Shown here piece after piece: positions 5,752 through 32,400 of a stretch of 64,000 nucleotides of DNA. The position numbers and the translations under genes are program-made. Positions within the stretch are counted from its first letter, which is position 1; each line of letters begins with the position of its first letter. Below the pieces are notes generated by a model. It saw nothing but the letters and a program-made list of their open reading frames with translations. It did not search any database and was not told where the DNA came from. The DNA is from Botryllus schlosseri (lineage: Eukaryota): assembly GCA_051294905.1 (NCBI GenBank), contig CM119384.1, forward strand, positions 18,228,001 through 18,292,000, written 5' to 3'.

Positions 5752-5755
5752 AATT

Positions 5756-7430: not shown

Positions 7431-8538
7431 AAATTCTCCGGAATTATCTCCGATGACGTATAACGCACAAAACCTGCTTACATATTACTATTAGTATTTT
7501 CAACAATATCAATCAGAAACAACCATAATAATACATCCAGTTTAATGTTCATTTTCCATCATTTTCCGACCAACTTGTCGATCACTGCTTATTATAACAC
7601 CGAATACCTTCGAAACTAGCAGCTCTGCGTAATCAATTTGCAGATCCATACAGTACATTAATGCCCGATACACCTAATGACACCATTAGTCCGCCCTGTA
7701 TATATATGTAAGAGTCAATGTATCGATAAGCTACAGTATTTACATCACGGCCAGCGCTCGTCTACTATCATAATAATGCATGTTTCAGCATAAGCAGAGT
7801 TGTACGATGCACACTTGCACAGCTAAAGAGCCACACGGGATGATATTCTGTGATAATATAGCTCTATACCAAATTTCCTGTTAAGGACAGTAGAGCATAT
7901 GTGCGATGGCAATAAACAATTATTACTTCTTAACACTACGCTGTAAAACGCTGATAACTTCCTTTTAATAGTTTCAACAGCTACAAGTATATCAGCAAAG
8001 AGACCGGCGTGTCTGTGCGATGCGTGCTCTTCGGCCTCTGGTTCGTTTTTAGTAATATTTTCCTCGATTCAACACACTGCAAGATTGCGATAAATGAAAT
8101 GAAGTGTGGTTCTTGCCAAAGAAACTTTCCCACTTTCATCTCAGCACCAACTAAACAATGATAAGAATATTATGATTTGCCCAAATATTAACATCACAAT
8201 CATTAGTATGTAATGCACCGAACTATGCGTGCTTCTGGCATATATACATTATACATATACATGCATCGCACACATCTATACATAGCTTTTGTCTTGAGTT
8301 GAGTAGCTCTTCACCTTTTTCCTTCAGCAACGGTCTCATGAACTTTCATGGTGTGATGCCCCCCTCATATTTTTAGGGTTGTACTATACAGACTATGCGG
8401 TAAATGTCGAAGTCTCGTCTATTTTGCAGAGTTTGGCCTTCACTATTGGATTTTATGCGCTTGAATGGCATCCGATTGCCACCCAAAGAATTACCTATTT
8501 AATAATTGTATGTACTATTTTCGGGATCAAATCATGAT

Positions 8539-9470
8539 CAGGACCGAAACATCACTTCGTCAGTCCCCCCCAAAACGTTTGTCTTGAGTCCCCCATAGGG
8601 CGATAAACTAAACTTCTGGAGGGCTTCGGCCTCAGACTTCCCATCAGGATATAGCCTACTGCGATTCAACGCGAATTTGTTATCCCAATTCACCAGCATA
8701 TTATCGCCTAATCGTGAGAAGCGCGAAAATTTTCTATAAATTCAGAGTTGGATCGGTCAATAATATCAGGAATTGCATACTTATTGATATATATTTTATA
8801 TCCTCTCTCTGCCCACGTAATGAGATATACCGATAGAGCTGAGAGAGGTGTTGTCCAGGAAAATTTTAAGCCCATAAATATTAATTAAATTAATGATTTG
8901 GTTACATGGTGTTTTTTCGTGACCTCCTGTCTGCTATGTCAAAAGATAATGATATTGCCTAAACTTACTGAACTAAAAGACGCGCACGATTTCAAATAGG
9001 TATTTCTTCACTGGCAAATAATTTTTCTCTGCGGGATGGCATTTGTCTTGTGGGGTTCAGATTGCCAAAACAGGAACATGTGGCGCCAACGATTCAGGCA
9101 CCTGTGGATAATTAAACATATATGCATTGCATATATATCAAAGATTTTGGTCAGTCTATAAGGGCAGTCGTTTTCGGCCAAAGATTTCTCGCTGCCGAGT
9201 GCCGATCGTTCTGGCACATCTTCTCGGAGTCGCATGCAACATGGTCTAAAACTTTTGGTGCGTTGTGCTCGGTAATGACCGATGACGAAATGCCCTTTAC
9301 TATAAATCATCCGTGTTGCTTCTTGGAGGAAGGTTACCCAATAATACATCTAGCATCAATAAATCGCGCATGGCGCGAAAAATTGAATTAAGTTGCATAA
9401 ATTTTCGAATAAAATACTCTATAATTTATGTTCATTCACGAAATAATTATCCGCACCCCGATTCCACCTC
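8539..9470 (-). mobile_element. Family B MITE, reverse orientation, one end lost
   Basis: CAGGACCGAAAC terminus at 8539; reverse complement of the block shared with 4049-5320 and 52034-52897 (spurious peptide ERSxLxSEKxLAEKDCPY in all three). Confidence 0.8.
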
Positions 9471-9772
9471 CGTGATTGCCGATATGGGGAGGTTGTGTGG
9501 GGTTTTGGAGAGAGCTCGTCAGTAACGTATACGTATACTATAGTACTTCTACCTTATCGAAGTCAGGAATACATATCCCTGTTAAAACCACTTTTTATAA
9601 CTCTGTTTAGTGATGTCGAACGGTTCGCATTTAAAAGATTCTAATTCTGCTCACTTTCCACAGTTTCTGGCCGCATTTCCAAATGTCAGTACCAATAGAC
9701 GAAATGCCAACAGTATATTTATTATACTATTCTTAGAAATTACAATGAAACGTCGGTCTTGGCCGTCTGAGA

Positions 9773-9949
9773 GTCGAGTCAAATGACTTGGCCCGAGTCA
9801 TGCGCAATGACTCGATTCCTACTCGAGTCAATGCACAGATTGACTCGAGTCGAGTCGAGTCATTTACGTATTTTCAGAAAATGACTCGAGTCAAGTCGAG
9901 TCATCAGAAAATCGCGACTCGAGTCGGGACTCGAGTCATTACAAGCCTG
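9773..9949. mobile_element. MITE end with GACTCGAGTC arrays (relative of family A)
   Basis: Dense gactcgagtc/gagtcgagtc motifs ending in CATTACAAGCCTG. Confidence 0.7.
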
Positions 9950-10392
9950 TTATACCCACGGTTAAGACTATTCATGAGCTTCGAGCGGGTTAGCTTCGGT
10001 CAGCATGTGTCGGTAAATTTGGGCCAAATTTTTATCTCCGCCAATCTTTTAGCGCTGTTGTATGTCGGCCGAAAGCTGAGACGTCATGACCTGTCTTTTG
10101 GCGGTAAAGTCCCACAAGAAAATGGTAATGCCAAATGCCAATAGTCCCACACCTAGACCAGTGGTTCTTAACCGCCACCTGCGCTATTGTTAAGCTAATG
10201 TACAAGCCTTCCGGGAACACGAAATTTCTGCGGAGTCACAAAAACAAAATTCTACCATACGGCCGCAGATTGACCAGCCTAACCATGATATTGAGAGATA
10301 ATAAAAGTAGACGTATCTTATCTCGTTCGTATTGTGAATGTATTATTATCTTTTTGCCGCAATGAAATTCATATTGACATTCGATGCTACTG

Positions 10393-10400
10393 TGACGTCA
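10393..10400. promoter_or_regulatory. CRE (ATF/CREB) consensus site TGACGTCA
   Basis: Perfect palindrome 167 nt upstream of the module ATG; positionally conserved in the other copies. Confidence 0.5.
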
Positions 10401-10559
10401 TAATAATTGAGAATTTTTTCCACTCAGCCGTCCTAGCGGTTTTTGTAATGTTATTGTATCATGACATGTGCATAAACTGCATATCCTTGGAATGTATCAC
10501 GAAACTCTCTATTGATAAACAGGTCATCTATTCGATCGAAAAGATCGTCTGGTCGTATT

Positions 10560-10576
10560 ATGGATGCTGAAGACAG
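10560..10576 (+). CDS. Candidate alternative first coding exon (MDAED, phase 2)
   Basis: ATG + 14 nt + GTAAG donor, same length and phase in three copies. Confidence 0.5.
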
Positions 10577-11032
10577 GTAAGCAATTTTCTTGGTGAAAAA
10601 TCGGGATATACTAGAGTGAATTTTTTATTATGACACCTCCAAAAAATCATATTATCCCTTAATTTTCTTCAATGTGTCATCGAATAGCTATACTTTCAAT
10701 GAGACACCGGTGTCGACATATAATCACTTCATCATCAATGGTTATTGAATGCTTAATTGCTTATGGTCATAATAAATAATAATGGTCTATAACAGTTACT
10801 TACGCAGTTACATAGCAGCCTAATGGCGCTTATTGCTCTGCGCCATGGGCGACAGGCTGCTAGGAGGCAGCAAAATGTGAGGTGATGACCTTTTTTTAGT
10901 AAACACAACAAAATTTCCAGTAAATATAATTGAAAAGATTGGAACTTTCAAAATTTGGTCGGCATTTTCAACGAAAGCAATGGACGGCAGCATATGCTTC
11001 TACGCCACTGTACAAGTGTACACTGTACACTA

Positions 11033-11462
11033 AGTCTCTTCAAAAATGACTTTTTTTCTCAAATCGTACTGGCTACTTGATAAAATTGTTAGGTTACCTA
11101 ATTACGCATACACACCAAATTTGGTTCAATTCCAACCAGTAGCCGCATTGCTACAGGAGAAGATAGTTTCTATTTATTATATAAAAATAAATAGCTAAAA
11201 ATTTGAAAATTTTCTGTTCACCCCAAGAAAGTGTTAGGTTGTGTACACAAACGATGCTCACCAAATTTGGTTCAATTCCAACCAGTGGAAGTGGAGTTAC
11301 GGCCGTCGAAGAATTTGGATTATGAATAAAATAGTATTTACGGTGACCAATTCTTTAATTATTTATTATAGTGGTGCCCACCGTAAATACTATTTTATTC
11401 AAATCCAAATTTTTCGACGGCGATAACTCCTCTTCCAAAAAAGGTCATTTTTGAAAAGCCCT
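11033..11462. mobile_element. Palindromic MITE with a central ~140-bp hairpin
   Basis: Terminal IRs ..TTCAAAAATGACTTTTTT / AAAAAAGGTCATTTTTGAAA; 11292-11345 is the reverse complement of 11373-11432. Confidence 0.7.
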
Positions 11463-12793
11463 TCTGTACACTCCTGCTGTCCTACACTACCAAATTATAG
11501 CACAGCACAATAAACTTGCCACTTGTGCAATTGATAGCAAGTAGAGATTCGTCACTATTGCATCGCCAGGGATAGTTGAAATTTTGAGCTAAACCGAAAC
11601 AGGACTGAGCCCACAGTGAAATAATTATGATAACTTGCAGCCGTGATGATGTTAACTGAAGACATTAATATTACTTGAAATGAATAGAGTTTTTTTAGTA
11701 TGGTGTGTAGGCCTATGGCGTGTGTATGATGAAGTTCCATAAATTTTTGAAGACAACAGCTCAGTGGTTCTCAACCGGTGTGCCGTGAAAGACTATAATG
11801 TGCCGATTGGTCTGCTCCCGGGAGCCGCTTGAAAATTTGGCCGACGTATAACAAAATTAAGGAATCCAAATTATGACTGCGTATCGTCTGTGGTTCTATT
11901 ATTTATTACCCGCACAGGGCACACAATGTATGCGATGTTATGAACAGATAGGTGATAATCGAAGCGACCAAGTACGGTCCGTCAATCTGGTATGCATCCC
12001 CACAGCCTATAATATCTGATATAGCAGTGTTCGATCGTTATCTTGATTTATTTTAGGCTTCCGCGCTCTTTTCCATTCTCTTTCTTGAAAACCGTCCTTG
12101 CGCGGGTCTTTTTCTGTGCGTTTATTATGTAAGGAAACTGAGCACAGCGATGTAGTGGAGGGGCCTCTATACCGTCAACAGAGGCGGAACACCAACCTGA
12201 CCTCGTATAATAACATTTGGGAAGGTGATGACTAAAAATAAGTGTAGCAATCGGACAATCTGACCGTGGTGTTGAGGTTTATAGGCCGAAGATGTTGACT
12301 TTTTCCCTGGCACCTCCATCAGAACTAATGGCTGACATGACGTCGGCTAATGAATTTTTCCTATTTATTTTTTAGTCGTCTTCTTGCCAAATCTTGCTCT
12401 CTGAGTACTCGTTGTTTTGAAGTGTTCATGGTATTTCGACATGATCATTTTACACCAAACTGACATTTCTTACTATTATTCCTGAATTACCAACTAATAC
12501 CACGGCCCAATTTCACCCCATAGTTGTTGTGAGACATCGCTTACGCGGATCACATAGCGAGGAAGATCCAGATGATCCTCCCACACTTAGAAATGGATCC
12601 TGGTACTCGAAGTTCTAGGGTGCCGCGATGGCAAAAGGTTGAGAATCACTTCCCTGGCTACTGCATCAGCTCTACTGGTGGATCTATTCACGCTGGCTGG
12701 GGTGGATTTGAAATCATATGCAAGTATACCAATATTACTGACCAGATTGATTCAATAGTTTGATAAATTTTCCGCCCTTTCTCGCTACTACAG

Positions 12794-12922
12794 AACTTAT
12801 GCTAACTAAATTCTAATTACAATAAATCCTCCGTTCGCCGTCACAACTATCCAGTCAGGTTCGTTGGTGAATGGTGGGATATACCGTTATACCGGACTTA
12901 TTCGCTACGGAAAAGCGCGAAT
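12794..12922 (+). pseudogene. Degenerate second-exon-like segment downstream of module copy 1
   Basis: Acceptor gctactacag|aac and donor aat|gtaagt; homologous to 14864-14977; 129 nt, but has a stop in the frame set by the first exon. Confidence 0.4.
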
Positions 12923-13809
12923 GTAAGTATGTGAATCATATGGAAAATATTGGCTGGTGATGAACCGAACCGACCTAGTGTCACTATATTTTTTATATTA
13001 ATGTGGCTATATATCCATTCCAAACAAAGAAATATAAGAATAAAAAGTATAAATAAACGCATAAATACGCCAGGGAGATCTATATATTCCTAAAGATCGC
13101 ATACCGTCATCTCCATCTGGTCCATGGGTAAAATCCTATCATGTAAACTGAGATAGGATAAAACATCGTGCATACCGCATACAAGTACCAATGTTATTGA
13201 CAAAATCCATTTATTGTCTGTAAAATTTTTCGCGCAAAAGGCTACCCATTCGCCCTCCGGCTCGTTCGTGAATTGCATAGCATAATGCCGGAACTATAGT
13301 AGGCCTACGCCGCGGAAAGAGTTTACGTGGTCGTCTATCATAATGGTCAGTCATGAAATGACCCGTTGACGGACTGGTTCTGGGGAACGAATCCTTCAAG
13401 AAGTTTGGTTGAACATGATCAGCGTATGGCATGGGGGTTGTTATGTTCTTGATCATGCTTGAACAATAACTCATACGACGAGGTTGCAATATGAAATCAG
13501 TATATAATCAGCAGAACAACAACTTAATACAGGCGAGACAATCCAGAGTGCAGGTGAAGGAAAGACGATAGAGAACAGAAAACAAGGGTATAAATACGAA
13601 GCACGACACACGAGGAAATAGGCTAATGATTGGCAGTAATTACTAATCCTAGACAAATAACAGACAAACGACACAAACGTCAAATGCACGAACGTAATAG
13701 GGGTCAAACGTTTTATCTCGTGGGCCGCATTCAACATCTGAATCCCCAGTGTATGACTTGGTTACTATAGTGACCTAAGGTTTATCGCTGTCGATCGTTC
13801 GGCAGCGAA

Positions 13810-14590
13810 TTCAGCACAGTGGCATTTCGGCCAAAACCTGATATGTCATGGTATATGTCTTGACGCGGTAAAGCCCGTGGCCGGAATACTGTTGCCTATG
13901 TAGTCAAACATCTAGACCAGTGATTCTTAAGCTTAACCTGGGATATTCTTACGCTAATCTGCAAGCCCTTGGGAACACCAAATTTCTACTGAGTGACAAA
14001 ATATAAATCCACCACTGTATTACGTGTAGACTGCAGCATAATTCTTTTTCTGCGGCCGCAGATTGGCCACCCCTGATATGGAGATACTGAAGGTAGAAGT
14101 ATAATATCTCTTGGGTATTGAGAATGCATTATCACTTTAATACCAAATTAAAAGTCGCATTGATATTCGATGCGAAAAACAATAAAAACAATCGGAATCA
14201 ACATCTAGTAGCGCATGATATGTATGTGCAATTGTGACGTAATAATGACAGAGAATTATTCCACCTAGCGGATTTTTATAATGTTATAATGTTATTGTAT
14301 CGTGTGCATATCCCAGCGAAATGTTTCGCGAAACTCTTTATTAATACGCATGTAATCTATGCGATCGTAGTGATCGTCTGAGGATATGGCGGCTGAGGAC
14401 AGGTAAGAAGTTTTATTGGTCAAAATCTGCGATTTCCATGACTGAAACCTACCAAACAGTCATTTATTGCTTCCTCAACTTTCTTCAATGTTTCATCGTA
14501 TTGCTATACTTTCAATGAGACGCCGGGGTCGACATATAATCATTTCTTCAAATTTATTCAATAGTTATTCAAAGTTCATGATCATAACAA
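13810..14590 (+). repeat. Promoter/first-exon module, copy 2
   Basis: TGACGTAA (14235-14242), ATG GCG GCT GAG GAC AG|gtaag (14386-14402), dyad GACGCCGGGGTC (14519-14530). Confidence 0.8.
14386..14402 (+). CDS. Candidate alternative first coding exon (MAAED, phase 2)
   Basis: Same 17-nt length, phase and GTAAG donor as copies 1 and 3. Confidence 0.5.
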
Positions 14591-14863
14591 TTGTTCTATA
14601 ACATGGTCTTATGGTCTCGTCAATTTTCATTAAGGATCAACCGTTATGGCAATAAGATTTTGTTACCTACAATGGTTATCCTACGCTACCAAATTGTGGC
14701 GTAGCCAATAGTAATTCCAGAGTTCCGCCATTGATAGTTCTACTAGTAAATGTAATCTCGTAGGCTGAGTTAGCATCACGATTAATACCAATACATGGAA
14801 GTAGCCTACTTGCCAAATCCATTCAATATCTTTAAATTATTTTCCCCCTTTTTGCTACTGCAG

Positions 14864-14977
14864 AACAAATGATAACATAAAATCTTGCGTTCGTCGTCAG
14901 GACTATCCATTCATTCCGGCTTGTTTGTGAATCGCGTGATACACCGGACTTGATTTGGTACGGAAAAGCGTGCATAT
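14864..14977 (+). pseudogene. Degenerate second-exon-like segment downstream of module copy 2
   Basis: Acceptor gctactgcag|aac and donor tat|gtatga; KSCVRRQDYP..RKSV matches KSSVRRHNYP..RKSA in 12794-12922; contains in-frame stops. Confidence 0.4.
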
Positions 14978-15235
14978 GTATGAGTGTGAATCGTACTACA
15001 TAAAGAGGTTGGTGATGAACTGACCCATGATTAGCATTGTCTGTTGGTCGGAAAAGGGCTGTTTCGATCATGGGTAGGCTGGGTAGCTTACGCCGCTATT
15101 TAGAATGATACTAACCTTTCGGGAATAAAAGCGACCGTAGCTTCCATATCAGAGGTGTCAAACCCAAATGGGGTCGCGGGTCGCATTCAAACCTTAGAGA
15201 TCGCTCGCGTGCAGGACCAGTCAAGTTATCCGACA

Positions 15236-15430
15236 AGAGCGTAATGGTGAAGCGTTCGGCTTCTTGATGGTAGGTCGTGGGTTCTATCCCCGGCCGGGTC
15301 AGACCAACGACCTAATTAGTAACACTGGTATCCATGACTTCCCAACTTGACGCTGATGCATTACTGGGATAGCATGGATGGGTGGTGCAAGACTTAGAAA
15401 GCCGTAAAAGGCTAAATCGGCACCTTCCTT
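15236..15430 (+). mobile_element. tRNA-derived SINE
   Basis: A-box-like TAATGGTGAAGCG, B-box-like GGTTCTATCCC, then ggccgggtcagacc..actggtatcc body shared with 20455-20620. Confidence 0.75.
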
Positions 15431-15619
15431 GTCCAGCGGCACATATGCACATCATGCACTCATGGTATCCATAGGCACGGATCGTGTTTATGCGTATCAT
15501 GAGTCGGTGTATATGCCGCAAAAACATCAAGGACGAAAATAAACTACGTCCTTTTCTTTACTTATCTCAAAACTTTACCTAATTCTCTTGGTCTTCATTT
15601 GAATAATTCATAATCAAGC

Positions 15620-17525
15620 CAGTGTTGGGATGACTCGAGTCCAGTGTTGGGATCAAGTCACTACCTTCGAGTCACGAGTCATTTCGAGTCACTGCAAATT
15701 TTGACTCTAGTCAAGTCAAGTCAATCGATTTTCAAAGGTGACTCGAGTCAAGTCAAGTCACTCGATTTTTGGAGGTGACTCGAGTCAAGTCGAGTCAAGT
15801 CAAGTCAAGTCACGAGTCAAGTCACATTTCAAGTCAAGTTGCCTTTTCGAAGTATGAGTCATGATTACGTCATTGCAATTTGCTAGCTGTCTGAAATACA
15901 GATTGAGTGGTCATTGGTTCCGAACCGGTGAACGAATATAGAGTTAAATACGCACGCAAGAAGACGCTGCATCGCTCACATATACGTAAAACTATTAAAC
16001 TACGTAAGTAATTGCATAGCCTCAGTTTATAGTTACCAGCCAAAATAGAGAATAGACAAACGAATTGAGAAGATGCAATACATTACCCATTTACAAATAG
16101 ATGTGATACAATTCGAGCATGCGTTGAGGACAATATAAAGTATATTCGAATTTAATTCAAATAAAACAAGAGGTTTGGTAAAGGTAAAAGAACAGAGAAC
16201 AGAAATAGACATTTTGCTATTTTATTACTACTAGAGTGAACGACAACGTAAGCTGTAAGCTTCGATCACTTCGTTTACGGTCAATTTATTTATGAGAAAA
16301 CAATCGCGGCTCAGTGGAACGCTCGATCATTGAATGATTGATCGCTTTCAAGGGTTGCACCAGCGTTTCGCGAACAATCCGAACATATGCAAGATACAGT
16401 GATTTTTATCGACGCCGATTACTTGATGACTTGAAATTGACTCGTGAATTTTGCTCCGAGTCACGAGTCAATCCACATTTCTGATACGTCGAGTCAAGTC
16501 AAGTCAAGTCATTTTAGCAAAGTGACTCGAGTCAAGTCAAGTCATACGAAAAAAGTGACTCGAGTCTGACTCGAGTCAAGTCATGACTCGAGTCATCCCA
16601 ACACTCGAGTCATGACTGGACTCGAGTCAGACTTGAGCCACCTTTTTCGTATGACTTGACTTGACTCGAGTCACCTTGCTAAAATGACTTGACTTGACCT
16701 GACTCGGCGTATCAGAAATGAGGATTGACTCGTGACTCGGAGCAAAATTCACTAGTCAATTTCAAGTCATCAAGTTATCCGTGTCGATAAAAATCATTGT
16801 ATCTTGCATATGCTCGGATTGTTCGCGAAACGCTGGTGAAAGCGTGAAAGCTACTAATTATTCAATCATCATGCGTTTTACTGAGCCCCCATTGTTTTCT
16901 CACAAATAAATTGACCGCAAACGAAGTGATCGAAGCTGACAGCTTACGTTGTCGTAAATAGTGGTACAGTAATTTAATAGCAAAATGTTTATTTCTGTTC
17001 TCCGTTCTTACCTTAACCAAAACTCTTGTTTTATTGAAATTGAATATAGTTTATGTAGACCTCAACCATTGGTGCAGGCTCGAATTGTATCATATCAATT
17101 TGTAAATGGGTAATGTATTGCATCTTGTCAATTCGTTTCTCTATTCTTTATTCTGGCTGGTAACTATAAAATGAGGCGATGCGATTACTTTTAGTTTAGC
17201 AGTTCTACGTTTATGTGAGCGATACAGCGCCTTCTTTCGTGTATCTTGAAATCTATATTCGTTCATCGGTTTAAAATCAATGAACACTCAATCTGTATTT
17301 TAGACAGCTAGCAAAATGCAATGACGTAATCATGCCTCATACTTCGAAAAGGCAACTTGATTTGAATTGTGACTTGACTCGTGACTTGACTTGACTTGAC
17401 TCGACTTGACTCGAGTCACCTCCAAAAATCGAGTGACTCGACTTGACTCGACTTGACTCGAGTCAAAATGTGCAATGACTAGAAATGACTCGTGACTCGA
17501 AGGTGGTGACTTGATCCCAACACTG
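15620..17525 (-). mobile_element. Family A MITE (reverse orientation) carrying a second copy of itself
   Basis: TIRs at 15620 and 17525; perfect 8-bp TSD AATCAAGC (15612-15619, 17526-17533). Confidence 0.92.
15642..16603 (+). mobile_element. Family A MITE inserted 22 bp inside the outer copy
   Basis: Starts CAGTGTTGGGATCAAG; flanked by CTCGAGTC (15634-15641, 16604-16611); right TIR lacks its terminal CTG. Confidence 0.9.
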
Positions 17526-18584
17526 AATCAAGCATATATACATAACATTATATTGAATTATAGCACAGATGATAAGGTTCTATCTAGCAACACCGTTATT
17601 CGCGAGCGATCGAATTCGCAAATTTACGATGAGTGGCCTGTTGAATACATACAGTAATGAACAGCGAAAACAGTGTCGCTAACGACGATATTAGTTGGCA
17701 TATTTTTATGCTCCGTTGGTTTAAGTTGTAACGTATGCGTATGCGTTGTGAGGAATATAAGAGATATATCAGTAAACGCGGACGTTGGAATTTGGTTTAT
17801 TGTTATTAATAAATCGCGATTCGGGTTTCTTTATTGTCCGGGGACCTTTTGAGTCGAAAGTGACACAGTAGTGTGACCACAGACATTTGGATTATATTTT
17901 GGGTGGCTGATATATTACACTCACCAACAAAATATTTCATCATGGATTGTAAGAACGATTTTAAGGTAGGCCTACATCAGTGCTCTGAGCACGAAAATAG
18001 CACTAGTTTCTGCTAATTCGGTCTTGTTTTCAAAATATGACCGAATTTAAATATTTCTAATTCTAATTTTTTATTTCATATAAACTAGGTTCCATTTTAT
18101 CCGAACAGCCTATATTAAATATTTTTGAATTGATAGGTCTGTCTGCACTGAAACCACGAGAATGCGACGAAGGTAAAGGCACAATTCGATCAGATTAAAT
18201 CACAAAAACGCCCCATTTATTCGTATTCCATCGGATTCTCCTATCATACCTTAATTGGTGACATTAAACTTCCTGTAGCCTACCTATAAATGTGTTTAAT
18301 GTGAAAAAATACATAGCAGTAATTCAGTAATAACAAACCAAGTAGGCCTATGCCTGATCTTACAAAAGACGATAATTTGTAAACACAGACGAAATGAATA
18401 AGAAAGCAATAATTTTGTTTGCCGGGGAGTATTCAGAGCTTCAGGAAGAAATAAATCCAACACAGGATGTGTATTAGTTAATTTTGTAGATGTAACTCTG
18501 GTAATTTACTCAAATTAGCTTGAAGTCACCTGCAGCAAAGTCTTGTACGACTTTGCTGGGGACATATTCGCAATAGGCTAGGTA

Positions 18585-18830
18585 CTGGCAGTAAGCTGCC
18601 ATCATGTGAGTATCCCAACTCTCTTGATATCTCTCTTCCATTTATTTGATATATAGGCGAAACCTTCCACTTTGTTCCTTACTTATCTTTCCGATATTTT
18701 CGGGGAAGCGATGATAGTAAACGTTATGCTCATTGCTCATGCTTTTCCTTGATCCAAGAACGTTCCTAAGCATCACTTTAAGGCGACCCATATCCTTGCT
18801 TGCTTTTGTCGTTCCAACCAAACTCAATAC
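18585..18830 (-). pseudogene. Second Chapaev-type transposase relic (C-terminus)
   Basis: FPENIGKISKEQSGRFRLYIK*MEERYQESWDTHMMAAYC resembles FPENLGxVSxEQGERFHQDIKxMExRYQGRWDxxMMADYC. Confidence 0.82.
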
Positions 18831-19344
18831 GATATGTTTAGTTGATCTTGACTAAAAGGCGTCATTTTACTCTGCATTCGTATGACGGAGCCGGTGTCAC
18901 TGCAGCTGCTAGACCAACTATTATTACCATCTTCGTCTTCCACTGCATCCTATAGCATATATATTCGAAATCATGCCTAGCAGGGTCGTAAAACTGCAAC
19001 AGGAATTTCAGGGCAGTGAGCAATTGGCTGTAAAGATTAGTCAATGCTGGCGTAGTGCTATGACTTCTTGAATCTTAACTGTCATTTATCTCCTCCTATA
19101 GCTCAAACTGGGGGAGGGGTTAATTAATGTAATCAGTCCATACAGTAAAATAGTCTCTAAATCAGGGGGGCCAACTTTTCCAGTCGGCGGGGCGGATATG
19201 GTAAAATGAAGTAGGCTACTTGGCGGGCCGGATTCCTGAATCTATACATTTATTACCGTAATGTACTTCATTAGCTGTTTATGTCGATGAGACATCTGGG
19301 GTCAATGAAATTGTGTACAGGTTCTTTGAACTTTGGCTGCTTGA

Positions 19345-19640
19345 TAGGGGATAATCCTCGATTTATCAACGAAAAACTCACATAACTCCGCTTCTGCTGG
19401 TCGGAATTACCTCAAATTTGTTTTGCAACGTCTTTGAAGACAGCTCAACAATTTCATGGGGTTGGCGGAAAATTTTTTCAATTTTCCATAATAAATTAAA
19501 AATTTTAATTGGATCTGCGGAGTCGTATACTTGTTAGAATCGAACCAAATTTGGTGTGCAGCGTTTTTAGGGTAACCTGACAATTTAATCAGTGAATGGC
19601 TGAAATCCGGGAAAAAAGTTATTTATAAACAGCCCTTGGC
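19345..19640. mobile_element. Non-autonomous DNA-transposon fragment (family shared with 62850-63159)
   Basis: Shares gaagacagctcaacaatttcatggggttg..aaccaaatttggtg..agggtaacctgacaattt..aacagccct. Confidence 0.7.
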
Positions 19641-20099
19641 CACCCTAGAATAGAGTCATGGTCCTGCTGAATGCTCGGTAATCGCTGGCGCTGATTCGCC
19701 TTTCTATAAAAGATGCATATTTTTTTACTTACTACCCGTATTAAAAATGTAGACTTCTAGCGACATGAAATTGCCACCGGATGCGATTATTGCTATTTTT
19801 ATGTGGCAATAACTAGACCTACCGCAGTACCGTAAATCTATAGCTGAAGGTTGACATCATAGGCGTAGCTGGGCGATAAAAGACGCCGTTGTCTCTCCTA
19901 TTTGCCACTTGTACATTGTGACTCCATACGTGTCACTATCACTGAGCTATTTAAACACCATACGTCTCATCAGAGTCGGCTGGAAAGCTTGAGGTAGCCT
20001 ACGTATAATTAGACAATATGAACACCTGTTTTGTGCGAAGAACATGTCGATTATAACTAAATTTTCACAAAATCTACAATTTTCGATATAGCCTTGTGG

Positions 20100-20455
20100 C
20101 TCAATGAACTACGTGTCACTGTGACGTCATAATGATAGTAATTATTGCACAAAGCGATTTTTTTCTCGCATTGTTATCGTATCGCGTGTATAATGCACTG
20201 TGCGTATCCTAGTGAAATGTTTCGAGGAACTCTCTATTAATAGTCATGTCTTATATTTGATCGCAAAGATCGTCTGGCTATATGGATGCTGAAGATAGGT
20301 AAGAAGTTTTCTTGGTAAAAATTCGCGAAATCCTTGACTGACACCTCCAGAACAATGAGATTTAATCCTTGTTTATTACCTTATGTCAATGTTTCGTCGA
20401 AATGCTACACTTTCATTGAGACACCGGCGTCGACATAGAATTATTTTTTCTAATT
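20100..20455 (+). repeat. Promoter/first-exon module, copy 3 (nearest the gene body)
   Basis: TGACGTCA (20122-20129), ATG GAT GCT GAA GAT AG|gtaag (20282-20298), dyad GACACCGGCGTC (20420-20431). Confidence 0.8.
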
Positions 20456-23400
20456 AATGGTGATGTGTTCGACTTCGTGATCGGTAGGTCGTGGTTCGAA
20501 CCCCGGCCGGGTCAGACCTAAGAGTCGAGAACTGGTATCCGCAGCTATCCTGTTAGACGCACCCATGGATAGCGTGGATGAGAAACAAAAACAGGGGTGC
20601 GGACTAGGTGACCTAGGGGTCACATCGCATCTTCGTCGTCAAAGCATCTCGATGGGGCAGGCGAAAATGAATATCATATATCTATCTCTCCCTCTCTCTC
20701 ATGGTCATAATAAATTGGTCTATGATATCTCGTTATATTCATTAATGATCAACGGTTATATCAGTGAGATTGAACAATCCTACAATCCTACACTATCACA
20801 TCATAGCGTAATCAATAGTATTTCCGGGTGGCGCAATTGACAGCTCGTAGAGTTTGGTCACTATTGCATCGCCTGGGGGGAGATGTGGTACCGATGGATC
20901 ACTGGGACCGAAAATACTTGAAAAATTTTCCATGATAATTCCATGATTGCACTCCGTGAATTTTTGTACAATAACATGCTGACAGAATCTTTCCTCACAT
21001 GCAAAAAAATTCGACCTGCGCGAGTTATGGGGTCTGTGACGAATGATTTACGTTTTAGGGGGTATGAAGTAAATTTAGATCGACATTTGCATTTTTCTAT
21101 ATCACCTCACAGACTAACAAACCCGCCATAATTTTTGATGTGAATTATAGGGCTTGTATCAGGGTATATAATGCCACATATTTTTTGAATCAATACCATC
21201 CTCGAGTGGACTATTTTCAAGTCAATTACAATATTTATGGGGTGGGGGACCTATGGTACCATAGCCAAATCAAGCCAAATAGATGGGCCAACTAATCACT
21301 TAACAACAGAAACTCGACTGCATATATATAGGCGTTAAATCATAGTTACATGTGGTGTTTTATCCCTATTACGAGGTATTTGAAAGTCAAAATGTCGATT
21401 TGCGGGTAATATGTATGTGGCATTAATTTTGTATGTTTAGGCGTAAATCAAAGCATGATTTTATGCCAACATTTGGGTTGATATAATCTATTTTATTCTT
21501 GAAGGTCGCGACGAAACATTCTTCATTGGCTTGTTGTAGCTTAGCTTACAGTACACAACTAAACAAGTTAACAAATTTGAGTTTTTGAGCGTATGTCTCA
21601 TAGGTCCCATGATCGTGTGCCTTTGGACCCACCGGGTGGGGACTGGGGACCGTTCGAGCAACAAATTTTAAACGTTCATAAATATTTTTTGAATAATCGC
21701 ATATTCATGTAAATGTCCGCGATAGTTAGAGCTTGTATCAAAGTGTTGAGACAGCAAAAGATCCGCTATTCTCGGCTGAAGATTTGAGGGCTAGAGATCA
21801 TTTTGCAATTTTTGATCCATCGGTACCACATCTCCTCTATTGTTTAAGTTGATATAGACCTAAACAGAGCTGTGCCCGCAGTGAAGGCAGTGTCTTGATT
21901 TCCAACAGTGATGATGCTAACTGTTTCATCAGTATTTCTTCCGGTCGCTAGAATAACCATTTGGGATCAGATATCTTGATTTCAATCTGTACTTATATAG
22001 GCCTACCCAAACCAGGAACATCTTGATTCTAGATGTTCTAGATATCTCTGACCCAAACATACAACTATTCCCAGATTATACATAAAACAGGATGGACTAA
22101 TGTTCCGAAAAGTCTCTTTATCGAAGAATTATTGTTGAAATGAAATATATTACATTGAAATTAAAAATTAGCATTTTCCCGATGTAACTAGGATTTCACA
22201 GTTCTAAGGCATTATGAGGTGCGGGATAACTGGTATCTTTGGTGAGAGAAAACATGATTAATATTTATCTAGATGAGCTTTAGCTCGATTGTTCAGTAAA
22301 GCCAGTATTTCCAATGTTCGCATGCAACTCAGTGCAATTATTTGCTAGAGATATGAGAGCTGCAATGCATAATACATTTACTCTGAAACAATTTTGATTA
22401 CTCGCAAATTTAATTCTGGCATTATTTCAGCATCGACAAGCAGAGGATGGAAAATTCATTTTCGCCATCCTCAGCTGGATTCGATTTCATTCCTAAACGG
22501 AAAAAAATGACGGTTTGTTGCATTACTGCATATTACTGCATATTTGGCAATATTCATTTTATATCGCAGGTGCTTTTATGAACAGCATGTCGCGTACCGT
22601 ACTGCATTCAATCAATCTTTTGTGTGTCGATGTCATGTTTGATTGTATTTTTGAATTTTGCGCTGATGAGTCAATTCTCTCTCTTTCTCCGTCCCTAACA
22701 TTCTACTGGCAACATACATTTATGTAGGCTCCCTCTAATATTCCATCTCCACGCCCTATTGAAGATGTCCAGCCAATTAGTCCTTCTAGTAATATAGGCG
22801 TCAGAAGAGTAAGCTCGTATCAATTTCGCATAATTCATCTTGCAGACATTCCGTAGAGCTATGAACCGGGTTGTAGCTTTGTTTTCGTGGCTTTCCTCAT
22901 TTCGATGCTCGAACTGCAAGGTAAGAACATTGTTAAATATAATGTATGAAATAGTTACTTCAAAATATATCATTTGCAGCGCACGAAATCGGAAGATCAG
23001 AGTCAGGTGAGACTTAATTGAAGCATATCTGATGAGAAGGTGTTTAATTTCATCCGATCATTTTTTTGACCCTGTCATTCCGATATCAACTCTGATCAAG
23101 CAGTAGCGAATGATTGAGCTTTCTGATTATTCTGTTAGTTATTACATAACCTTTTATCTCGTTTGTACCTCTTTGAAATCAGCAACTGGTTCACACACGT
23201 CTTCTGAAATGACTGGTGCTGTACGAATTCGATTCTACGGCCCATGATGGAGATTTAAGACGGGCAAAGTATATCAGGAATACGGTATGACAGATGTCCG
23301 TGGGGCGCCAGAAATGAACATAGCGTCACAATGTCAATATCAAAATGTTGAATGCTTTGAGGACCTTGTTCCCACCTCGCTGTTGCATTTCCCAATCAAA

Positions 23401-26400: not shown

Positions 26401-29400
26401 TATATACCCCATGGCTCCGGGTACTTGAGGCATAGGCGCCGACTTTTATTTTTGCATGGGGTGGCGGCAGGCGCGTAGTCAGGGGGTGTCGAAACACCCT
26501 CCGTTTGAAACGCAAAACCCCTTCCTTTTGAAATGGCCCATCTGACGCTAATATTCAGTTGCAATTCAACAAGTCGTGTTATCAGTGTTACGCTGGGCCA
26601 ATTAGCGAGATTCGTCTGTGCAGTGTGCACGCATATCGCATCGCTCAATGTAACGCGACGCGATCTCCCGCTGAGATGATTGCGAAACTAGGTCATTGAT
26701 TGCCGCCATATCGGCATGCGTCGCTGGACTGAGCAGTAACACGGCGCGACAATTCTGGAACACGAAAGATAGGCAAGAATAATGATTTGATTACAAACGC
26801 GCACGGCCTATCGGTAATTATTCCTCACCGCCAACGCAATGGGTTTTTACTTAGTATTGAGTAGCTCGCATCGCGACAATTGCTGGTTGCTGATTAAAAC
26901 ATCGATTTTGACTGCATTGCTGCATTTCCTGATTAACGTTCGCAAAGAATAATTGGATTAATATTATGGGCACTGGAATAGTTTCCAACTAGCAGGCACA
27001 CACAATAAAACTCCGTTCAACTATGCGCTACGAGAATATTTATCACAAAAATGTTTCGCAAAATATTTTAAACGCGACTTGCGGCCCTCATCGATGCAAA
27101 TAATGCAATTTTATTTGTAGACGGTGAACGTTTATTTGATCGGCAAATCGCGATAGGAGACGATGTTTCTCAGAGTGTGCGATGAAATTTACGTTTCCAA
27201 CGACGAGGTCGAATTTGTACATCAATAAGGATCGTTAGTTTGCTGAAATCAGCATCAGTACGCTGTGCGAAATACATAGTAGTGATCAATTTTATCGGAC
27301 TGTACAATCGGCCGGCAAGGTTGCGCTGATAGCGAAGTTGCAGACAAGCCGCAAACCTGCAATAATTAGAATTACAGGGTGCGCTAGTCATACCTAAATA
27401 CCCAGATTCGGCAATGGCAATGAGCACAATTTGTTCAGACGCGGGCATAAGTTTTAATCAAAAAGATACATAAACACAAACAATATTACACTCAGAGATT
27501 GTTACTGTTTGGCGGAAGTGTTTCTGCGGACGACAGTAGGCCTGCATGCGGACGCGCTAAATCAAAGCACCGCCGATAGTGCACATGTGATATCGATGAC
27601 CCAGTTCGCATACAAATGATTCTCACTAATTTGCAGTACGCAGCATCGATAATACGAATTAGTGAATTGGCATTTGGACTGGATTTATAGTTTTAATACC
27701 GACAACGCGCTGGTTAACATCAGCCCGGGGCCTTCGGCCTACGTAAGTCCCGATCAGCCAGTCGAATTTGATCGCGAAACGGTACAATTGTAATTATCCA
27801 GGTGTTATTGAAGCAAAAGCAATATGGGCGCATGCCGCAACCTTATCCATACAAATACAAATCCCGATGGTCTGAAATTCGATCCGCGACATGGTTGCGC
27901 GCGATAGAGTCCGTCCAGCAATGGAGTTTGTTGGAACATAAAAGGTTCCCGCTCAAACTAATCGAATAAATTCAGAATTTACGCCACCGAGAACTGCTTG
28001 TTGCATCAATATTTGACAACATGATTCAACGCCGTGCACTGCACAATGCGCACTATAATAACAATCAAACAAACACTGATAAGTGTCTTCGAAGAATACG
28101 AGTGTATTAAGCAGACAAGAATTAGTAGCCTGGAGATGATAGCAAACGAGAAAGCGAGTATCTAATAAGTAATTACTCAACTTGCGTATACCAAAATGGG
28201 GTTCCGAGTCTGACATCGCGACAATTGTTTGCAATTGAATATGCGCACTTTGCGCAGAACAGACTTTCAATTCGCAGGCATACAATAGCACACTGCCCTA
28301 TTTCACACAACTAACTCAAGAATTATTTTGTAATCGAATACGTTCGCAAAGACAAGTTAATTAATAGAAGTAGAACGTGAATTCGCTCATTCGGTATAGA
28401 AAAAGCTGGTATTTCTCCGAGCACGCGCGTCGAAATCGACGTCGTAAACGAGGTCGCTTCGATTGTATGATTACCAATCACGAATTACAATTTATTGGGG
28501 CGTTTTAAGCACTATTTCAAGCTGAGTATTCAATTAATCGCGCGCGTATCGGGTAATAGTAAATATAGTTGGCATTTACGCGATAATCATAGACTTGCTA
28601 ATTGACAGCATAGATGGCGGGTGATTAACCAATTTGTATGGGGTGTCCGCCACCCCATAATTATGTCATGGGGTGGCTGAGCCACCCCGCCACCCCATAA
28701 TTCGGCGCCTATGCTTGAGAGTACATAATTCTGTAACGAATCTCTTAAAATTCACAATCACTTCAAGCAAGTATCAGCGGAGCATTCGTGCTTTTATTTG
28801 CACAGATTTTGGAGCCTGAAGAAAGCGGCAAGAAAGTGCCGGTGCCGCTATCCTATGACAAACCTGCTCAGGTAAATGCTTTGTTGTATGTTACTATAAG
28901 TGAAATGGATAGATAGTTTAATACTTCATCGCTTGCCGAATATGAACAAATAAACAAAATCTCTATGGATTAGGTGACGACTAGCGACCGCGAGGCTAGT
29001 ATGAACTAGTTCATGTAAGTTTTTGATAAGAAATATTTGACCAACAATATGGCGTATCGAAAAATGAGAAATATATTGAACCGCATCAAAAGCTTGCCCG
29101 CCTCTTATTATCGCAGTCTTTATTCACAGTAAAACTGGTAAATACACACATAATCCAGGAGCAACCTGCCCCCCCCCCAAGGAAACTGTCTTGATTGAAG
29201 TAAACTTTTAAAATTTCAGAAATATAGTCAAATTGTTATTCCTATGCAATACATGGAGATGTCAGATTACAGAATCGCAGTAGATGAAGAATTGACAAGG
29301 GTTGCAGAGCAGAAATAGAGATGATTGAAAATGAAGAATCGAAATTACAGATATTATGCTGCGATTCACGCGCACAAGTGTAATTTTAGTCCAGTGGTGC

Positions 29401-32400
29401 ATTCAAGGCCTTCCGAAAAATATGCACATTGCCCAATAACGTGACCTTCTGGATCATGTCGAATCGAACGTTACCCGGAATCTAATGGATATGTCTCATG
29501 AGTTTTTTGCTTACGACCCCTGTAGCGCCAATGACTATCGGTACAATGTTTACTTTGCATCGCCACATTTTCACACATTCCATTTTGAGATCTGCGTATT
29601 TCGAATATTTTTCTGATTCTTTTTGTAGTATGTTGTGATCAGCTGGGAAAGCCAGTTCAATGAATAAGCATTCTCTTTTCTTTTTCAGTTTGATTATCAT
29701 ATCCGGGTGGTTGCTCCAGATTTCGTGGTCAGTTATAACTGGTACATAACACATAATTTTTACTTGGTCGTTTTCTGTCACTGGTGCTGGCTGTAATCAT
29801 ACCAATTTTTTTGTCGAAGTGGTGATGTTAAAATGTTTGCATAATTCAAGATGAATGTAGTGACCAACCTTATTGTGTCTCCATGCGTATTCGGTAGCTG
29901 AAATTAAGTGCACCCCAGCCGTGAGATGTGCTACAGTTTCATTTTGGTTGTGGCACATTCTGCATTTGCCGTTCGTGTTTTGCTTCAGAATTCTTTTGCG
30001 ATAGTATTTTAATATTAAGATTATTATTATTTATTATTAAAAACATGTTATTGAGGATCAAAGACGAAATCCCCGGTTGGTGAATATGGTGATTTATCTA
30101 ACTTTATGAAATCTGTTGTTAATTCCATATCTTTGAAGTAGTTTGATTTTTTGTGATTCTTCGGCACTTGAATCGAGAAGTCGGATTGTCTCCTCGCGTA
30201 TATCTGTCATTTGTTAATGGATTGTTAAACACAACGAAATTGATTCTATTTCAGAATTGGTCAATAGGCCATGGTGTGATATTTGAGGGATTTATGCGTT
30301 GTATCGACTATATTTATGTGGAATGTTACTGATAGAAATGCTTGTTGTTATCGACAGACGGTAATCCGATAGTGACTCAAACATTACAATGCAAAATTTG
30401 AAATCAATTACAAAAATTCAATCTTTTATGTCTTTTCTCCAGTACCGGACAGTGTTGTAATCATGCCGGGATCTGCTCTTCTTTTTCTAAATAGATTTTG
30501 ATATTATAAATTTGTTTCTAAATAGATTTTGGAACGCGAAAGTAAAGAAATGCAAATGCAAATGCATACCGAAGAACTTTCTGAAGCAAAATCTCTTCCG
30601 CAGGTAATTATTTCACATTAATTAGTTATTGCATTTTCCATCAAAACACATAGTTGATTTTTTTAAATGAACCATCGACATCCACTGATGCCGAAACAGT
30701 TTTGTCTGAGAACGCCGAAGGCAAGCTCACTGTGGGTAGAGAAGAATAGTTTCAAAACAACGTCCCATTAAATCCAAGATATTTTCGTTCTTTGTGCAGT
30801 ATACAAAGATGAAAGAATTAGGATCGTCTGATTCTCCACCTCAGCAGGAACAACTGGAATCGTCTGATTCTCCACCTCAACAGGAAGAATTAAGATCCTC
30901 TGATTCTCCACCTCAACAGGAAGAATTAGGATCCTCTGATTCTCCACCTCAGCAGGAAGAATCAGTATCGTCTGATTCTCCACCTCAGCAGGAAAAACCA
31001 AGATCGTCCGATTCGCCACCTCAGCAGGAAGAATTAGGAACGTCTGATTCTCCACCTCAGCGGGAAGAATTAGGATCGTATGATCCTCAACCTCAGCAGG
31101 AAGACTTTCATAATCTCCAGGTGAGGTTTGTTTATAATATTGCTAAATAAAAAGTAATGTATGTTGCAGTATTCATCCTAATATGATGTAATTGTATTCG
31201 AGGTCGTTGAAGTAGTCACTATGGGCACTTGAGCATCGGCGGAGTACAATTGGTGATGTAATATTTTCCATCACTCAGAGTAGAACTAGTGCCCTCCTAG
31301 ACAGCCCTAATCTGCAGATAGTCGGAGACAAGTAAGAGTTTGGAAAATACTCGAATAGCTTGAAATAGTAGCGTGTGAAAATGGGTAACTGGCAGTTATT
31401 GGAAACGTTTTTTGAAAAGACTACATTTCAGCATGGTTGCTAGTGGCGTAGAAGTTTCAATTACAAAATTCAATTCTCTGACTGTAATGAAACGGGTTTG
31501 TGAAGATTTCTTTAAAAATATTCACTCTACCTGCCCCAGTGGACTATGCCTTGCTTGTAAAACAGGTATCCACCGCCTCCTTCTTAGGCTCAGACACTCC
31601 TGAATAGAGATGTGGAATATTGATGCTGATTCCATATCCTTCTGGTTACTTTACATAATCATAGCTCAAGCACCCTGACGGTACAGACGAAAACAAATAA
31701 GCAGATAGCTTTAGGCAATTGGGGAGTTCTCTTAGTCAATACATGTACTGTCATTAACGTGATATACCCAAGTCGAATGTTGGTAGTAGCATGTTTCGAA
31801 GTGTTGAAGCATCAGAAGTTTATCTGGTCTCCTCCTGTAAATCGCTATTTTGATGGCGTTTTTAGTACTATGACGTATTGTTTCTAATTGTGATCCGTAT
31901 TATTTTTGTGACATTTAGATTCCGGCAAAAAAGGATTCCACATTCAAAACGGGCGTCGACAATGTCGCTTTAGAAATGGTTAGTGAAATGATATCAGGAT
32001 GGTATATGAGTAGCAATGAATCGAAATTCCCGTTTGATCTGCAGCGTCAGAACGTAATGAAGGCAAAAAATGACACAGCGCCCGAGCCTTTGGAACAAGT
32101 ATGAATCGAATCATATTTTCTCCAAGCCATTCATTATTCCTAAATTCCTGTCAAATTACATTGCCACAGTGGGTTTGCAATTCCGTTTTTCGTGCTTTGC
32201 AAGCATTTATATTTGAAGCAGCGTACCTTATGGCTACTAAATCTAATGAATCTTATTTTTCTGTTAATTTATAGATTACGGTGGACACAGTATGTGAATT
32301 GGAAATTTGCATTGATGATGTCGCGTCCAAAATGGTAAATGAAATAGTAATACGAAGCATGGATTGCAATTAATCTAAATTCATCTTTGGTCTACAGGTT

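What the first reader, a model, noticed from the sequence alone, without database searches (positions are those of the whole stretch)
10040..22512. Three tandem CRE-promoter/17-nt first-exon cassettes that could each splice in frame to one shared gene body
Seen: three diverged copies (about 10040-10745, 13810-14590, 20100-20455). Each keeps TGACGT(C/A)A 151-167 nt upstream of an ATG, a 17-nt coding stub (MDAED, MAAED, MDAED) ending in AG|GTAAG, and an intronic dyad. Codon differences include synonymous ones (GAA/GAG, GAC/GAT). All end in phase 2 and would join the exon at 22431 (AG|C = Ser, then IDKQRMENSF..) in frame. Homology between copies 1 and 2 extends upstream of the hAT-like terminus they contain, which favours segmental duplication over a TE-borne cassette. 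Known: clustered alternative first exons exist in protocadherin and UGT1 loci. Inference: this is a small promoter-choice array, or the remains of two dead 5' gene duplicates.
Basis: partly seen in the sequence, partly recalled or inferred. Interest (0 to 1): 0.72.

Follow-up and report, generated by a model that had tools for sequence, protein, structure and literature searches.

The report
Triplicated CRE promoter and mini first exon
Three old tandem copies of a promoter plus a tiny first exon sit upstream of one fast-evolving sea-squirt gene of unknown function; their key signals have been preserved, so they look like alternative promoters, but no RNA yet shows any of them in use.

Summary
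Three copies, 73-79% alike, each hold a CRE-like site 151-167 nt upstream of an ATG, a 17-nt stub and an AG|GTAAG donor. Each stub joins exon 2 (22431) in frame.

It is not a transposable element. About 20 copies exist genome-wide, and every one examined lies upstream of a paralog of one orphan gene family (C14, C6, two on C8, at least two on C2). Most loci carry two or three cassettes.

The gene body is real. Splice sites and frames are kept across paralogs, and the large exon has dN/dS 0.18-0.35 between the window, C6 and the C8 loci.

Across 12 cassettes the CRE and the donor show one change in 15 columns, against an average of 1.33 per column (P<5e-6). An intronless fragment on C8 joins exon 1 to exons 2, 3 and 4 exactly, so this type of first exon was spliced to exon 2.

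The RNA test failed.

The best reading is alternative promoters with first exons that change regulation, not the protein. This is an ordinary kind of feature.

The parts
10048..10749 (+). Cassette 1, the whole duplicated unit. CRE-like site TGACGTCA at 10393-10400. Inferred first exon about 10468-10576, with a uORF ATG at 10492 and the main ATG at 10560. Donor GTAAGC at 10577. Intronic dyad at 10703-10714.
   Evidence: The transcription start is inferred from the 5' limit of the processed fragment.
13810..14572 (+). Cassette 2. CRE variant TGACGTAA at 14235-14242. Inferred first exon about 14292-14402, ATG at 14386 (MAAED). Donor GTAAGA at 14403. Imperfect dyad at 14519-14530.
20120..20464 (+). 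Cassette 3, the proximal and shorter unit. CRE TGACGTCA at 20122-20129. Inferred first exon about 20189-20298, ATG at 20282 (MDAED). Donor GTAAGA at 20299. Imperfect dyad at 20420-20431. A repeat element follows directly from 20455.
   Evidence: Zero RNA depth.
22431..22512 (+). Exon 2, 82 nt, entered in phase 2 and left in phase 0. Acceptor tttcag|C, donor ACG|gtttgt. It holds an in-frame Met (MENSF) that is kept in all four paralog loci aligned and in the processed fragment.
22728..23006 (+). Exons 3, 4 and 5 at 22728-22808, 22846-22920 and 22980-23006. All are phase 0-0. Splice sites and frame are kept in the C8 paralogs, and length differences are multiples of three.
28806..50681 (+). Chain of small phase-0 exons with acceptor, donor and open frame shared with both C8 loci: 28806-28871, 32045-32098, 32275-32334, 32398-32451, 32643-32729, 39319-39369, 40148-40207, 40264-40302, 41791-41868, 50574-50681. 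This is a tentative gene body, and the introns are full of TE insertions.
   Evidence: Codon periodicity at 41760-41898.
53862..54680 (+). Large Lys/Glu-rich exon at 53862-54528 and the next exon at 54588-54680. The large exon is open in the window, C6, C8a, C8b and C2. dN/dS is 0.18 (window vs C6) and about 0.33 (window vs C8).

Best explanation
The three cassettes are paralogous promoter-plus-first-exon modules of one multi-exon, lineage-specific gene. Its second exon starts at 22431 and the gene runs to at least about 54.7 kb.

Each module has these parts:
- a CRE-like bZIP site about 50 nt upstream of the inferred transcription start;
- a leader of about 90-95 nt holding a short upstream ORF and a palindrome, TTTCGCGAAA in most family cassettes and in window cassette 2 (one or two changes in cassettes 1 and 3);
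- an ATG and 5 codons;
- a strong AG|GTAAG donor;
- a conserved dyad about 130 nt into the intron.

The modules arose by local segmental duplication, and TE insertions later spread them apart. Transcription starting in any one of them would splice in cis to exon 2 and give essentially the same protein (MDAED or MAAED, then a common body). The array therefore varies regulation or promoter dosage, not the protein.

Shown: the anatomy, the frames, the low copy number, the link to one gene family, selective constraint on the CRE and donor, constraint on the gene body, and past exon 1 to exon 2 splicing of the proximal type in a paralog.

Inferred: the transcription start positions, binding by a CREB/ATF-type factor, and present-day use of cassettes 1 and 2.
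For: 1. Anatomy and frame are as stated.
2. A 356-nt cassette query finds only 12 places in the 495-Mb genome, all at four colinear loci (C14, C6, C8a, C8b), three cassettes at each plus one processed fragment. Three more diverged cassettes lie upstream of further paralogs on C2.
3. Over 12 cassettes the 8 CRE columns and 7 donor columns show 1 parsimony step in total, against a mean of 1.33 per column. None of 200,000 random draws of 15 columns is as low. The donor is the best of 340 seven-column windows and the CRE is among the best 3 of 339 eight-column windows. Mean steps per column are 0.97 (CRE to ATG), 0.64 (stub plus donor) and 1.65 (intron).
4. The stub is 17 nt with no indel in all 12 cassettes. 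On C2 one cassette has a 12-nt stub (phase 0), and the next conserved exon there is phase 0.
5. At C8:16928690-16928976 an intronless fragment joins a proximal-type exon 1 to exons 2, 3 and the start of 4 exactly at the predicted junctions. This is a record of a spliced mRNA.
6. The gene body is under purifying selection: frames and splice sites are kept, and dN/dS is 0.18-0.35 between the window, C6 and the C8 loci. At least one promoter per locus must therefore work.
Against: - No RNA support. About 20 million raw reads from two bulk RNA-seq runs (about 6% of each run) and two contig sets gave zero depth on cassette 3 and exons 2-5.
- The only splicing record, the processed fragment, is of the proximal type and comes from a paralog.
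- Overall cassette identity between loci (73-78%) is not clearly above that of alignable intron DNA (about 70%). The constraint is motif-specific.
- Between the window and C6, cassette 2 has more differences than its surroundings, and cassette 3 the same number as its surroundings.
- The ATG is lost in 5 of 6 C8 cassettes, and two C2 cassettes have GC donors.
- A weak TAG acceptor precedes the leader in cassettes 2 and 3, so use as internal exons cannot be excluded.
Confidence: 0.58

Rival explanations
1. Only the proximal cassette 3 is the working promoter and first exon. Cassettes 1 and 2 are leftovers of partial 5' duplications. They are now pseudo-exons, or at most upstream enhancers that keep their CRE.
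For: The only record of splicing is of the proximal type. Cassette 2 carries a CRE variant and a cluster of leader changes relative to C6. In the C8 loci the distal cassettes have lost the ATG. There is no RNA evidence for any upstream cassette.
Against: The splice donor serves no purpose in an enhancer or a relic, yet it is invariant in all 12 cassettes of the four loci. It is the most conserved 7-column window of the alignment. The 17-nt length is kept without indels. Cassettes 1 and 3 agree at all 18 positions of CRE, ATG and donor, although they are only 73% alike overall.
Confidence: 0.27
2. The locus is a silent or decaying gene copy, so none of the three cassettes is used today.
For: Zero RNA depth over cassette 3 and exons 2-5 in all four runs laid. 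No homolog in the protein library and no Pfam domain. The introns are heavily invaded by TEs.
Against: All tested exons are open and keep their splice sites. The large exon has dN/dS 0.18 against the recent C6 copy, with dS 0.105. Only about 6% of two bulk runs was read, and stage- or tissue-restricted genes are easily missed.
Confidence: 0.1
3. The cassettes are stand-alone small RNA genes of the spliced-leader type (short leader, donor, U-rich site, stem). Tunicates trans-splice, so such a gene would donate its leader in trans.
For: Layout: a leader of about 110 nt, a GTAAG donor, a U-rich stretch (TTTTCTTGG) just after the donor and a dyad further on.
Against: No Rfam family matches. Copies exist only upstream of paralogs of one gene family. 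The U-rich stretch is not kept in the C8 cassettes, and changes in the dyad are not compensatory. The leader bears no likeness to the short ascidian spliced leader (recalled from my own knowledge, not tested here). The processed fragment joins the leader to this family's own exon 2.
Confidence: 0.02
4. The module is carried by a transposable element.
For: The CRE with its flanks, as an 18-mer, occurs about 2,600 times in the genome, mostly in two TE families. Cassettes 1 and 2 contain a dispersed TE-like piece.
Against: Those TE families share nothing with the cassette beyond the 18-mer. The whole cassette has about 20 copies, and every one examined lies at a paralogous gene locus. Homology between cassettes 1 and 2 runs through and beyond the TE piece.
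Confidence: 0.02

Closest known systems
Genes with several 5' leader exons, each with its own promoter, spliced to common coding exons (BDNF; the glucocorticoid receptor NR3C1, PMC4824077)
   Same: Tandem promoter and first-exon units share one downstream acceptor, and the protein is unchanged or differs by a few N-terminal residues. From established knowledge, one BDNF leader exon also supplies an in-frame ATG, and some BDNF promoters carry a CRE.
   Different: Here the units are clear sequence paralogs of one another with the same motif set, so nothing visible sets their regulation apart. Use of each unit is unproven.
Clustered variable first exons of protocadherin and UGT1A loci (protocadherin promoters with a conserved sequence element: PMC3333863)
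   Same: A tandem array of paralogous first exons. Each has a conserved promoter element and its own donor, upstream of shared constant exons.
   Different: Protocadherin and UGT1A variable exons are large and encode whole, differing protein domains. Here the exon encodes 5 nearly identical residues, so the array cannot diversify the protein. No distal enhancer or insulator logic was examined.
CRE-containing promoters bound by CREB/ATF factors
   Same: A full palindromic TGACGTCA lies within about 50-60 nt of the inferred start and is conserved in every cassette (TGACGT is invariant in 15 genomic copies).
   Different: Binding and cAMP response are untested. In this genome the same extended motif is also spread by TE families, so its presence alone says little.

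Membership tests
Clustered variable-first-exon locus (protocadherin / UGT1A type) | Tandem paralogous first exons, each preceded by its own conserved promoter element | tested here: met
   Three cassettes with a CRE 151-167 nt upstream of the ATG. The same layout is found at the paralog loci.
Clustered variable-first-exon locus (protocadherin / UGT1A type) | Each variable exon has a 5' splice site and no 3' splice site | tested here: inconclusive
   The AG|GTAAG donor is invariant in 12 cassettes. A TAG with a weak pyrimidine tract lies inside the leader of cassettes 2 and 3, so an acceptor cannot be excluded.
Clustered variable-first-exon locus (protocadherin / UGT1A type) | RNA shows each first exon spliced in cis to the common exons | tested here: inconclusive
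   Zero depth on cassette 3 and exons 2-5 in four runs. A processed fragment in a paralog shows exon 1 joined to exons 2, 3 and 4 for the proximal type only.
Clustered variable-first-exon locus (protocadherin / UGT1A type) | Variable exons encode different protein domains (protein diversity) | tested here: not met
   The stubs encode MDAED, MAAED and MDAED. The predicted products are identical but for one residue.
Alternative promoters with leader exons (BDNF / NR3C1 type) | Several promoter and first-exon units share one acceptor, with the protein essentially unchanged | tested here: met
   Met at sequence level only. All three stubs are in frame with 22431, and exon 2 also holds a conserved in-frame Met.
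Alternative promoters with leader exons (BDNF / NR3C1 type) | The promoters are used differentially (by tissue, stage or stimulus) | not testable with these tools
   Both the single read-laying run and the single run search were used. The gene was silent in the runs laid.
Transposable element / MITE | Many dispersed copies at unrelated places | tested here: not met
   A 356-nt query finds 12 places. The further copies on C2 lie upstream of paralogs. The TE families that share the CRE 18-mer are otherwise unrelated.
Spliced-leader RNA gene | Match to a known SL RNA model, with the leader found on many unrelated mRNAs | tested here: not met
   No Rfam match at E<=1 other than sub-threshold hairpin hits elsewhere. 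Copies occur only at this gene family. Use in trans could not be tested with RNA.
CREB/ATF-regulated promoter | Full or half CRE close to the transcription start | tested here: met
   TGACGTCA or TGACGTAA lies about 50 nt upstream of the 5' limit of the processed fragment, which is taken as the start. The start position is an inference.
CREB/ATF-regulated promoter | Factor occupancy and response to cAMP | not testable with these tools
   This needs ChIP or reporter assays.

The most novel reading that the evidence does not exclude
Promoter multiplication is itself the selected trait. Most members of this tunicate-specific gene family keep two or three near-identical CRE promoter and mini-first-exon units. 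The tree slightly favours the triplication having happened independently in the C14/C6 lineage and the C8 lineage. The stub length also appears to co-vary with the phase of the next exon (17 nt before a phase-2 exon, 12 nt before a phase-0 exon). That would make this a natural case of convergent 'promoter dosage' or stochastic promoter choice, with no protein diversity attached.
Probability: 0.12. Interest if true: 0.6.

Novelty: new member of a known kind. Interest (0 to 1): 0.36.

Why it matters
If the three units are all active, this is a clean natural example of duplicated promoters kept by selection with no change in the protein. It could be used to study promoter redundancy, promoter choice and the role of a promoter-proximal 5' splice site in a tunicate. 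As it stands it is a correct annotation of the 5' end of an uncharacterised, lineage-specific gene family, and an ordinary kind of gene architecture. The family-wide alignment gives a compact list of candidate control elements for reporter tests: the CRE, the TTTCGCGAAA palindrome, a short uORF and the intronic dyad.

Tried and rejected
- RNA test. I laid window:20001-26000 so as to catch the cassette 3 to exon 2 joint, plus loose ends at 22431 from the other cassettes. Depth was zero there in all four runs, and only high-copy repeats (20600-22000, 24600-26000) were covered. Pfam on ten ORFs found nothing relevant. A full HMMER search of 1.84 billion representatives with the 222-residue exon gave 0 hits. 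The ESM Atlas on a C-terminal exon gave no usable hit.\n- Rfam over 9500-23500 gave nothing above threshold.\n- Codon periodicity between the window and C8 flagged only 41760-41898. tblastx matched in all frames and did not discriminate.\n- Orthology of cassettes between loci is unresolved. The tree is star-like, the split between window/C6 and C8 has support 88/87, and holding the proximal cassettes together is not rejected (p-AU 0.105).\n- The leader motif TAGTGAAATGTTTCGCGAAAC has about 45 further near-matches, which belong to an unrelated repeat family.\n- The idea that C6 is a haplotig or homeologous chromosome was rejected. Unique sequence about 150 kb to either side on C14 has no C6 match.
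Full report
**What is there.** The window is C14:18228001-18292000 of a 495-Mb genome.

The three cassettes are exactly as described:
- ATG at 10560, 14386 and 20282.
- 17-nt stubs (MDAED, MAAED, MDAED) ending at 10576, 14402 and 20298, each followed by GTAAG.
- TGACGTCA, TGACGTAA and TGACGTCA starting 167, 151 and 160 nt upstream of the ATG.
- An imperfect dyad about 130 nt into the intron.

Cassettes 1 and 2 share about 700 bp (10048-10749 against 13810-14572). Cassette 3 shares about 345 bp. Core identity between the copies is 73-79%.

Each stub joined to 22431-22512, 22728-22808, 22846-22920 and 22980-23006 gives one open frame of 94 codons.

**Copy number and context.** A 356-nt cassette query finds 12 places in the whole genome. 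There are three on C14 and three on C6. The C6 locus is colinear with the whole window at 87-97.7% identity, non-coding DNA included. Three more lie at each of two tandem loci on C8, which are about 70% alike to the window. The twelfth place is a processed fragment.

The C6 copy is a bounded segmental duplication. Unique sequence about 150 kb to either side on C14 has no C6 counterpart.

A motif search then uncovered three more diverged cassettes on C2. They lie upstream of further paralogs that share the SDISDILKSE mini-exons and the large Lys/Glu-rich exon (62% amino-acid identity).

The module therefore belongs to one gene family and comes in one to three copies per gene. It is not a transposable element. 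The TE-like piece inside cassettes 1 and 2 (about 10190-10260) has dispersed relatives, but homology between the two cassettes runs through and beyond it.

**The gene body is real.**
- Exons 2-5 keep acceptor, donor and frame in the C8 loci, and length differences are multiples of three.
- A chain of phase-0 mini-exons with shared splice sites runs on to about 50.7 kb.
- The 667-nt exon at 53862-54528 is open in the window, C6, C8a, C8b and C2.
- That exon has dN/dS 0.18 (window vs C6, dS 0.105), about 0.33 (window vs C8) and 0.51 (C8a vs C8b).

The protein has no Pfam domain, no hit among 1.84 billion representatives and no Atlas look-alike. It is a fast-evolving, probably disordered, acidic/Ser-rich and Lys/Glu-rich orphan.

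**Constraint on the cassettes.** I aligned 12 genomic cassettes. They fall into five old lineages: window/C6 cassettes 1, 2 and 3, the C8 proximal cassette, and the C8 distal pair.

- The mean is 1.33 parsimony steps per column.
- The 8 CRE columns have 1 step and the 7 donor columns (AGGTAAG) have 0.
- None of 200,000 random draws of 15 columns is as low.
- The donor is the single best 7-column window of 340. The CRE is among the best 3 of 339.
- By region, steps per column are 1.78 upstream of the CRE, 0.97 from CRE to ATG, 0.64 for stub plus donor, about 1.65 in the intron and 0.90 at the dyad.
- TGACGT is also intact in the three C2 cassettes.
- There is no indel in the 17-nt stub in any of the 12, although indels are common just upstream.

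This is the footprint expected of working promoter and first-exon units in every lineage, the distal ones included. A conserved 5' splice site has no role in a dead relic or a pure enhancer.

**Start codon.** The ATG is ancestral, but it is lost in the C8 distal cassettes (CTG) and in one C8 proximal cassette (ATA). Two C2 cassettes lack it and have GC donors.

Exon 2 holds an in-frame Met (MENSF or MENQF) that is kept at the four loci where exon 2 was aligned and in the processed fragment. The stub's frame is therefore real in this window but not essential to the family.

One hint that it does matter: the C2 cassette with an ATG has a 12-nt stub (phase 0), and the next conserved exon there is phase 0. 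The leaders also hold a short uORF (MFRETLY-like) in all three window cassettes.

**Record of splicing.** At C8:16928690-16928976 a fragment joins a proximal-type leader and stub to exon 2, exon 3 and the first 17 nt or so of exon 4, with all three introns removed exactly at the predicted junctions. This looks like a reverse-transcribed piece of mRNA.

It shows that this exon 1 type was spliced to exon 2. Its 5' limit places the transcription start about 92 nt upstream of the ATG and about 50 nt downstream of the CRE; this is an inference. It speaks only for the proximal type.

**RNA test.** I chose 20001-26000, which covers cassette 3 and exons 2-5.

Two raw bulk RNA-seq runs (12.9 and 7.4 million records, about 6% of each run) and two contig sets gave zero depth over 20001-20600 and 22001-22800. 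Only high-copy repeats were covered. The gene was not detectably expressed in what was read.

**History.** The cassette tree is star-like. Window/C6 cassettes group against C8 cassettes with support 88/87 on a very short branch. Holding the proximal cassettes of all loci together is not rejected (p-AU 0.105).

Either the array predates the split of the loci and was kept in both, or it arose twice. In the C8 loci the two distal cassettes are only 300 bp apart. In the window, TE insertions have pushed the units 3.8 and 5.9 kb apart.

**Other readings.**
- No Rfam family, spliced-leader RNAs included, matches.
- The CRE with its flanks (an 18-mer) occurs about 2,600 times in the genome against about 30 for the control. 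Most copies are in two TE families that share nothing else with the cassette. The promoter's CRE could conceivably have been seeded by such an element, but the cassette as a whole is not one.

**Verdict.** The most likely reading (about 0.58) is a small array of alternative promoters and first exons. It affects regulation and leaves the protein essentially unchanged, closer to BDNF or NR3C1-type leader exons than to protocadherin or UGT1.

The main rival (about 0.27) is that only cassette 3 works. This is a known kind of architecture in an uncharacterised gene family, so interest is moderate to low until RNA data show which donors are used.

Noticed in passing
L014:8690-8976 (C8:16928690-16928976, minus strand): Intronless fragment of a paralog's mRNA: leader, stub (MDVEN), exon 2, exon 3 and about 17 nt of exon 4, joined exactly at the splice junctions. 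Homology then ends. It is a 5' fragment only, unlike the usual 5'-truncated retrocopies.
   Followed up: partly
window 1-64000 vs C6:14495001-14575000 (L001-L008): The whole window has a colinear copy on another contig with mosaic identity: 97% over 10265-14561 and 28714-42966, but 87-90% over 17512-24778. Relative to C6 the window carries an extra 5.8 kb (4471-10264) that ends 128 nt upstream of the cassette 1 CRE. Flanks about 150 kb away are not duplicated.
   Followed up: partly
genome-wide; examples L036-L046: The CRE with its flanks (CTGTGACGTCATAATGAT, up to 2 mismatches) occurs about 2,640 times against about 30 for the reversed control. Most copies are near the ends of two TE/MITE families. 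Another first-stage note of this scan (s1-274237) reports a MITE family spreading CRE sites.
   Followed up: partly
L020-L027 (C1, C2, C4, C9, C10, C11, C12): The leader motif TAGTGAAAT.TTTCGCG also occurs in a dispersed repeat family whose copies are 80-98% alike and show an internal period of about 400 bp. That family is otherwise unrelated to the cassette.
   Followed up: yes
window 41791-41868 and about 42131-42205; C2 locus L051/L052: Repeated 78-nt phase-0 mini-exons encode (S/D)DSDISDILKSEDAP(K/R)KK..KQ, an acidic Ser-rich stretch followed by a basic stretch. There are two copies here and four in the C2 paralog. This is the only place with clear codon periodicity between the window and C8.
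   Followed up: partly
window 30740-31147: An open frame made of tandem 36-nt units (..SSDSPPQQE..), conserved in position with the C8 loci. It may be a repetitive coding exon of the same gene.
   Followed up: no
window 20600-22000 and 24600-26000: High-copy repeats inside introns 1 and 5. Contig depth is in the thousands, and RNA reads are 95-99% alike with many loose ends, so they come from copies elsewhere in the genome.
   Followed up: no
window 10492-10515, 14321-14344, 20217-20240: A short upstream ORF (MYHETLY or MFR(E/G)TLY, then stop) is kept in the leader of all three window cassettes. It overlaps the palindrome, which is TTTCGCGAAA in cassette 2 and in most family cassettes (one or two changes in cassettes 1 and 3) and resembles an inverted pair of E2F half-sites.
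   Followed up: no
C2 rc locus, cassettes at C2:15076461-15076620 and 15070597-15070803: Two diverged cassettes have AG|GCAAG in place of AG|GTAAG and no ATG. They are either GC-AG introns or decaying units. A duplicate of one lies 211 kb away (C2:15281767).
   Followed up: no
window 42402-42947 (minus strand): An ORF of 182 residues with a weak, sub-threshold GIY-YIG match (E 0.009, 16.7 bits against a cut-off of 22.6). It is possibly a Penelope-like element remnant inside an intron.
   Followed up: no
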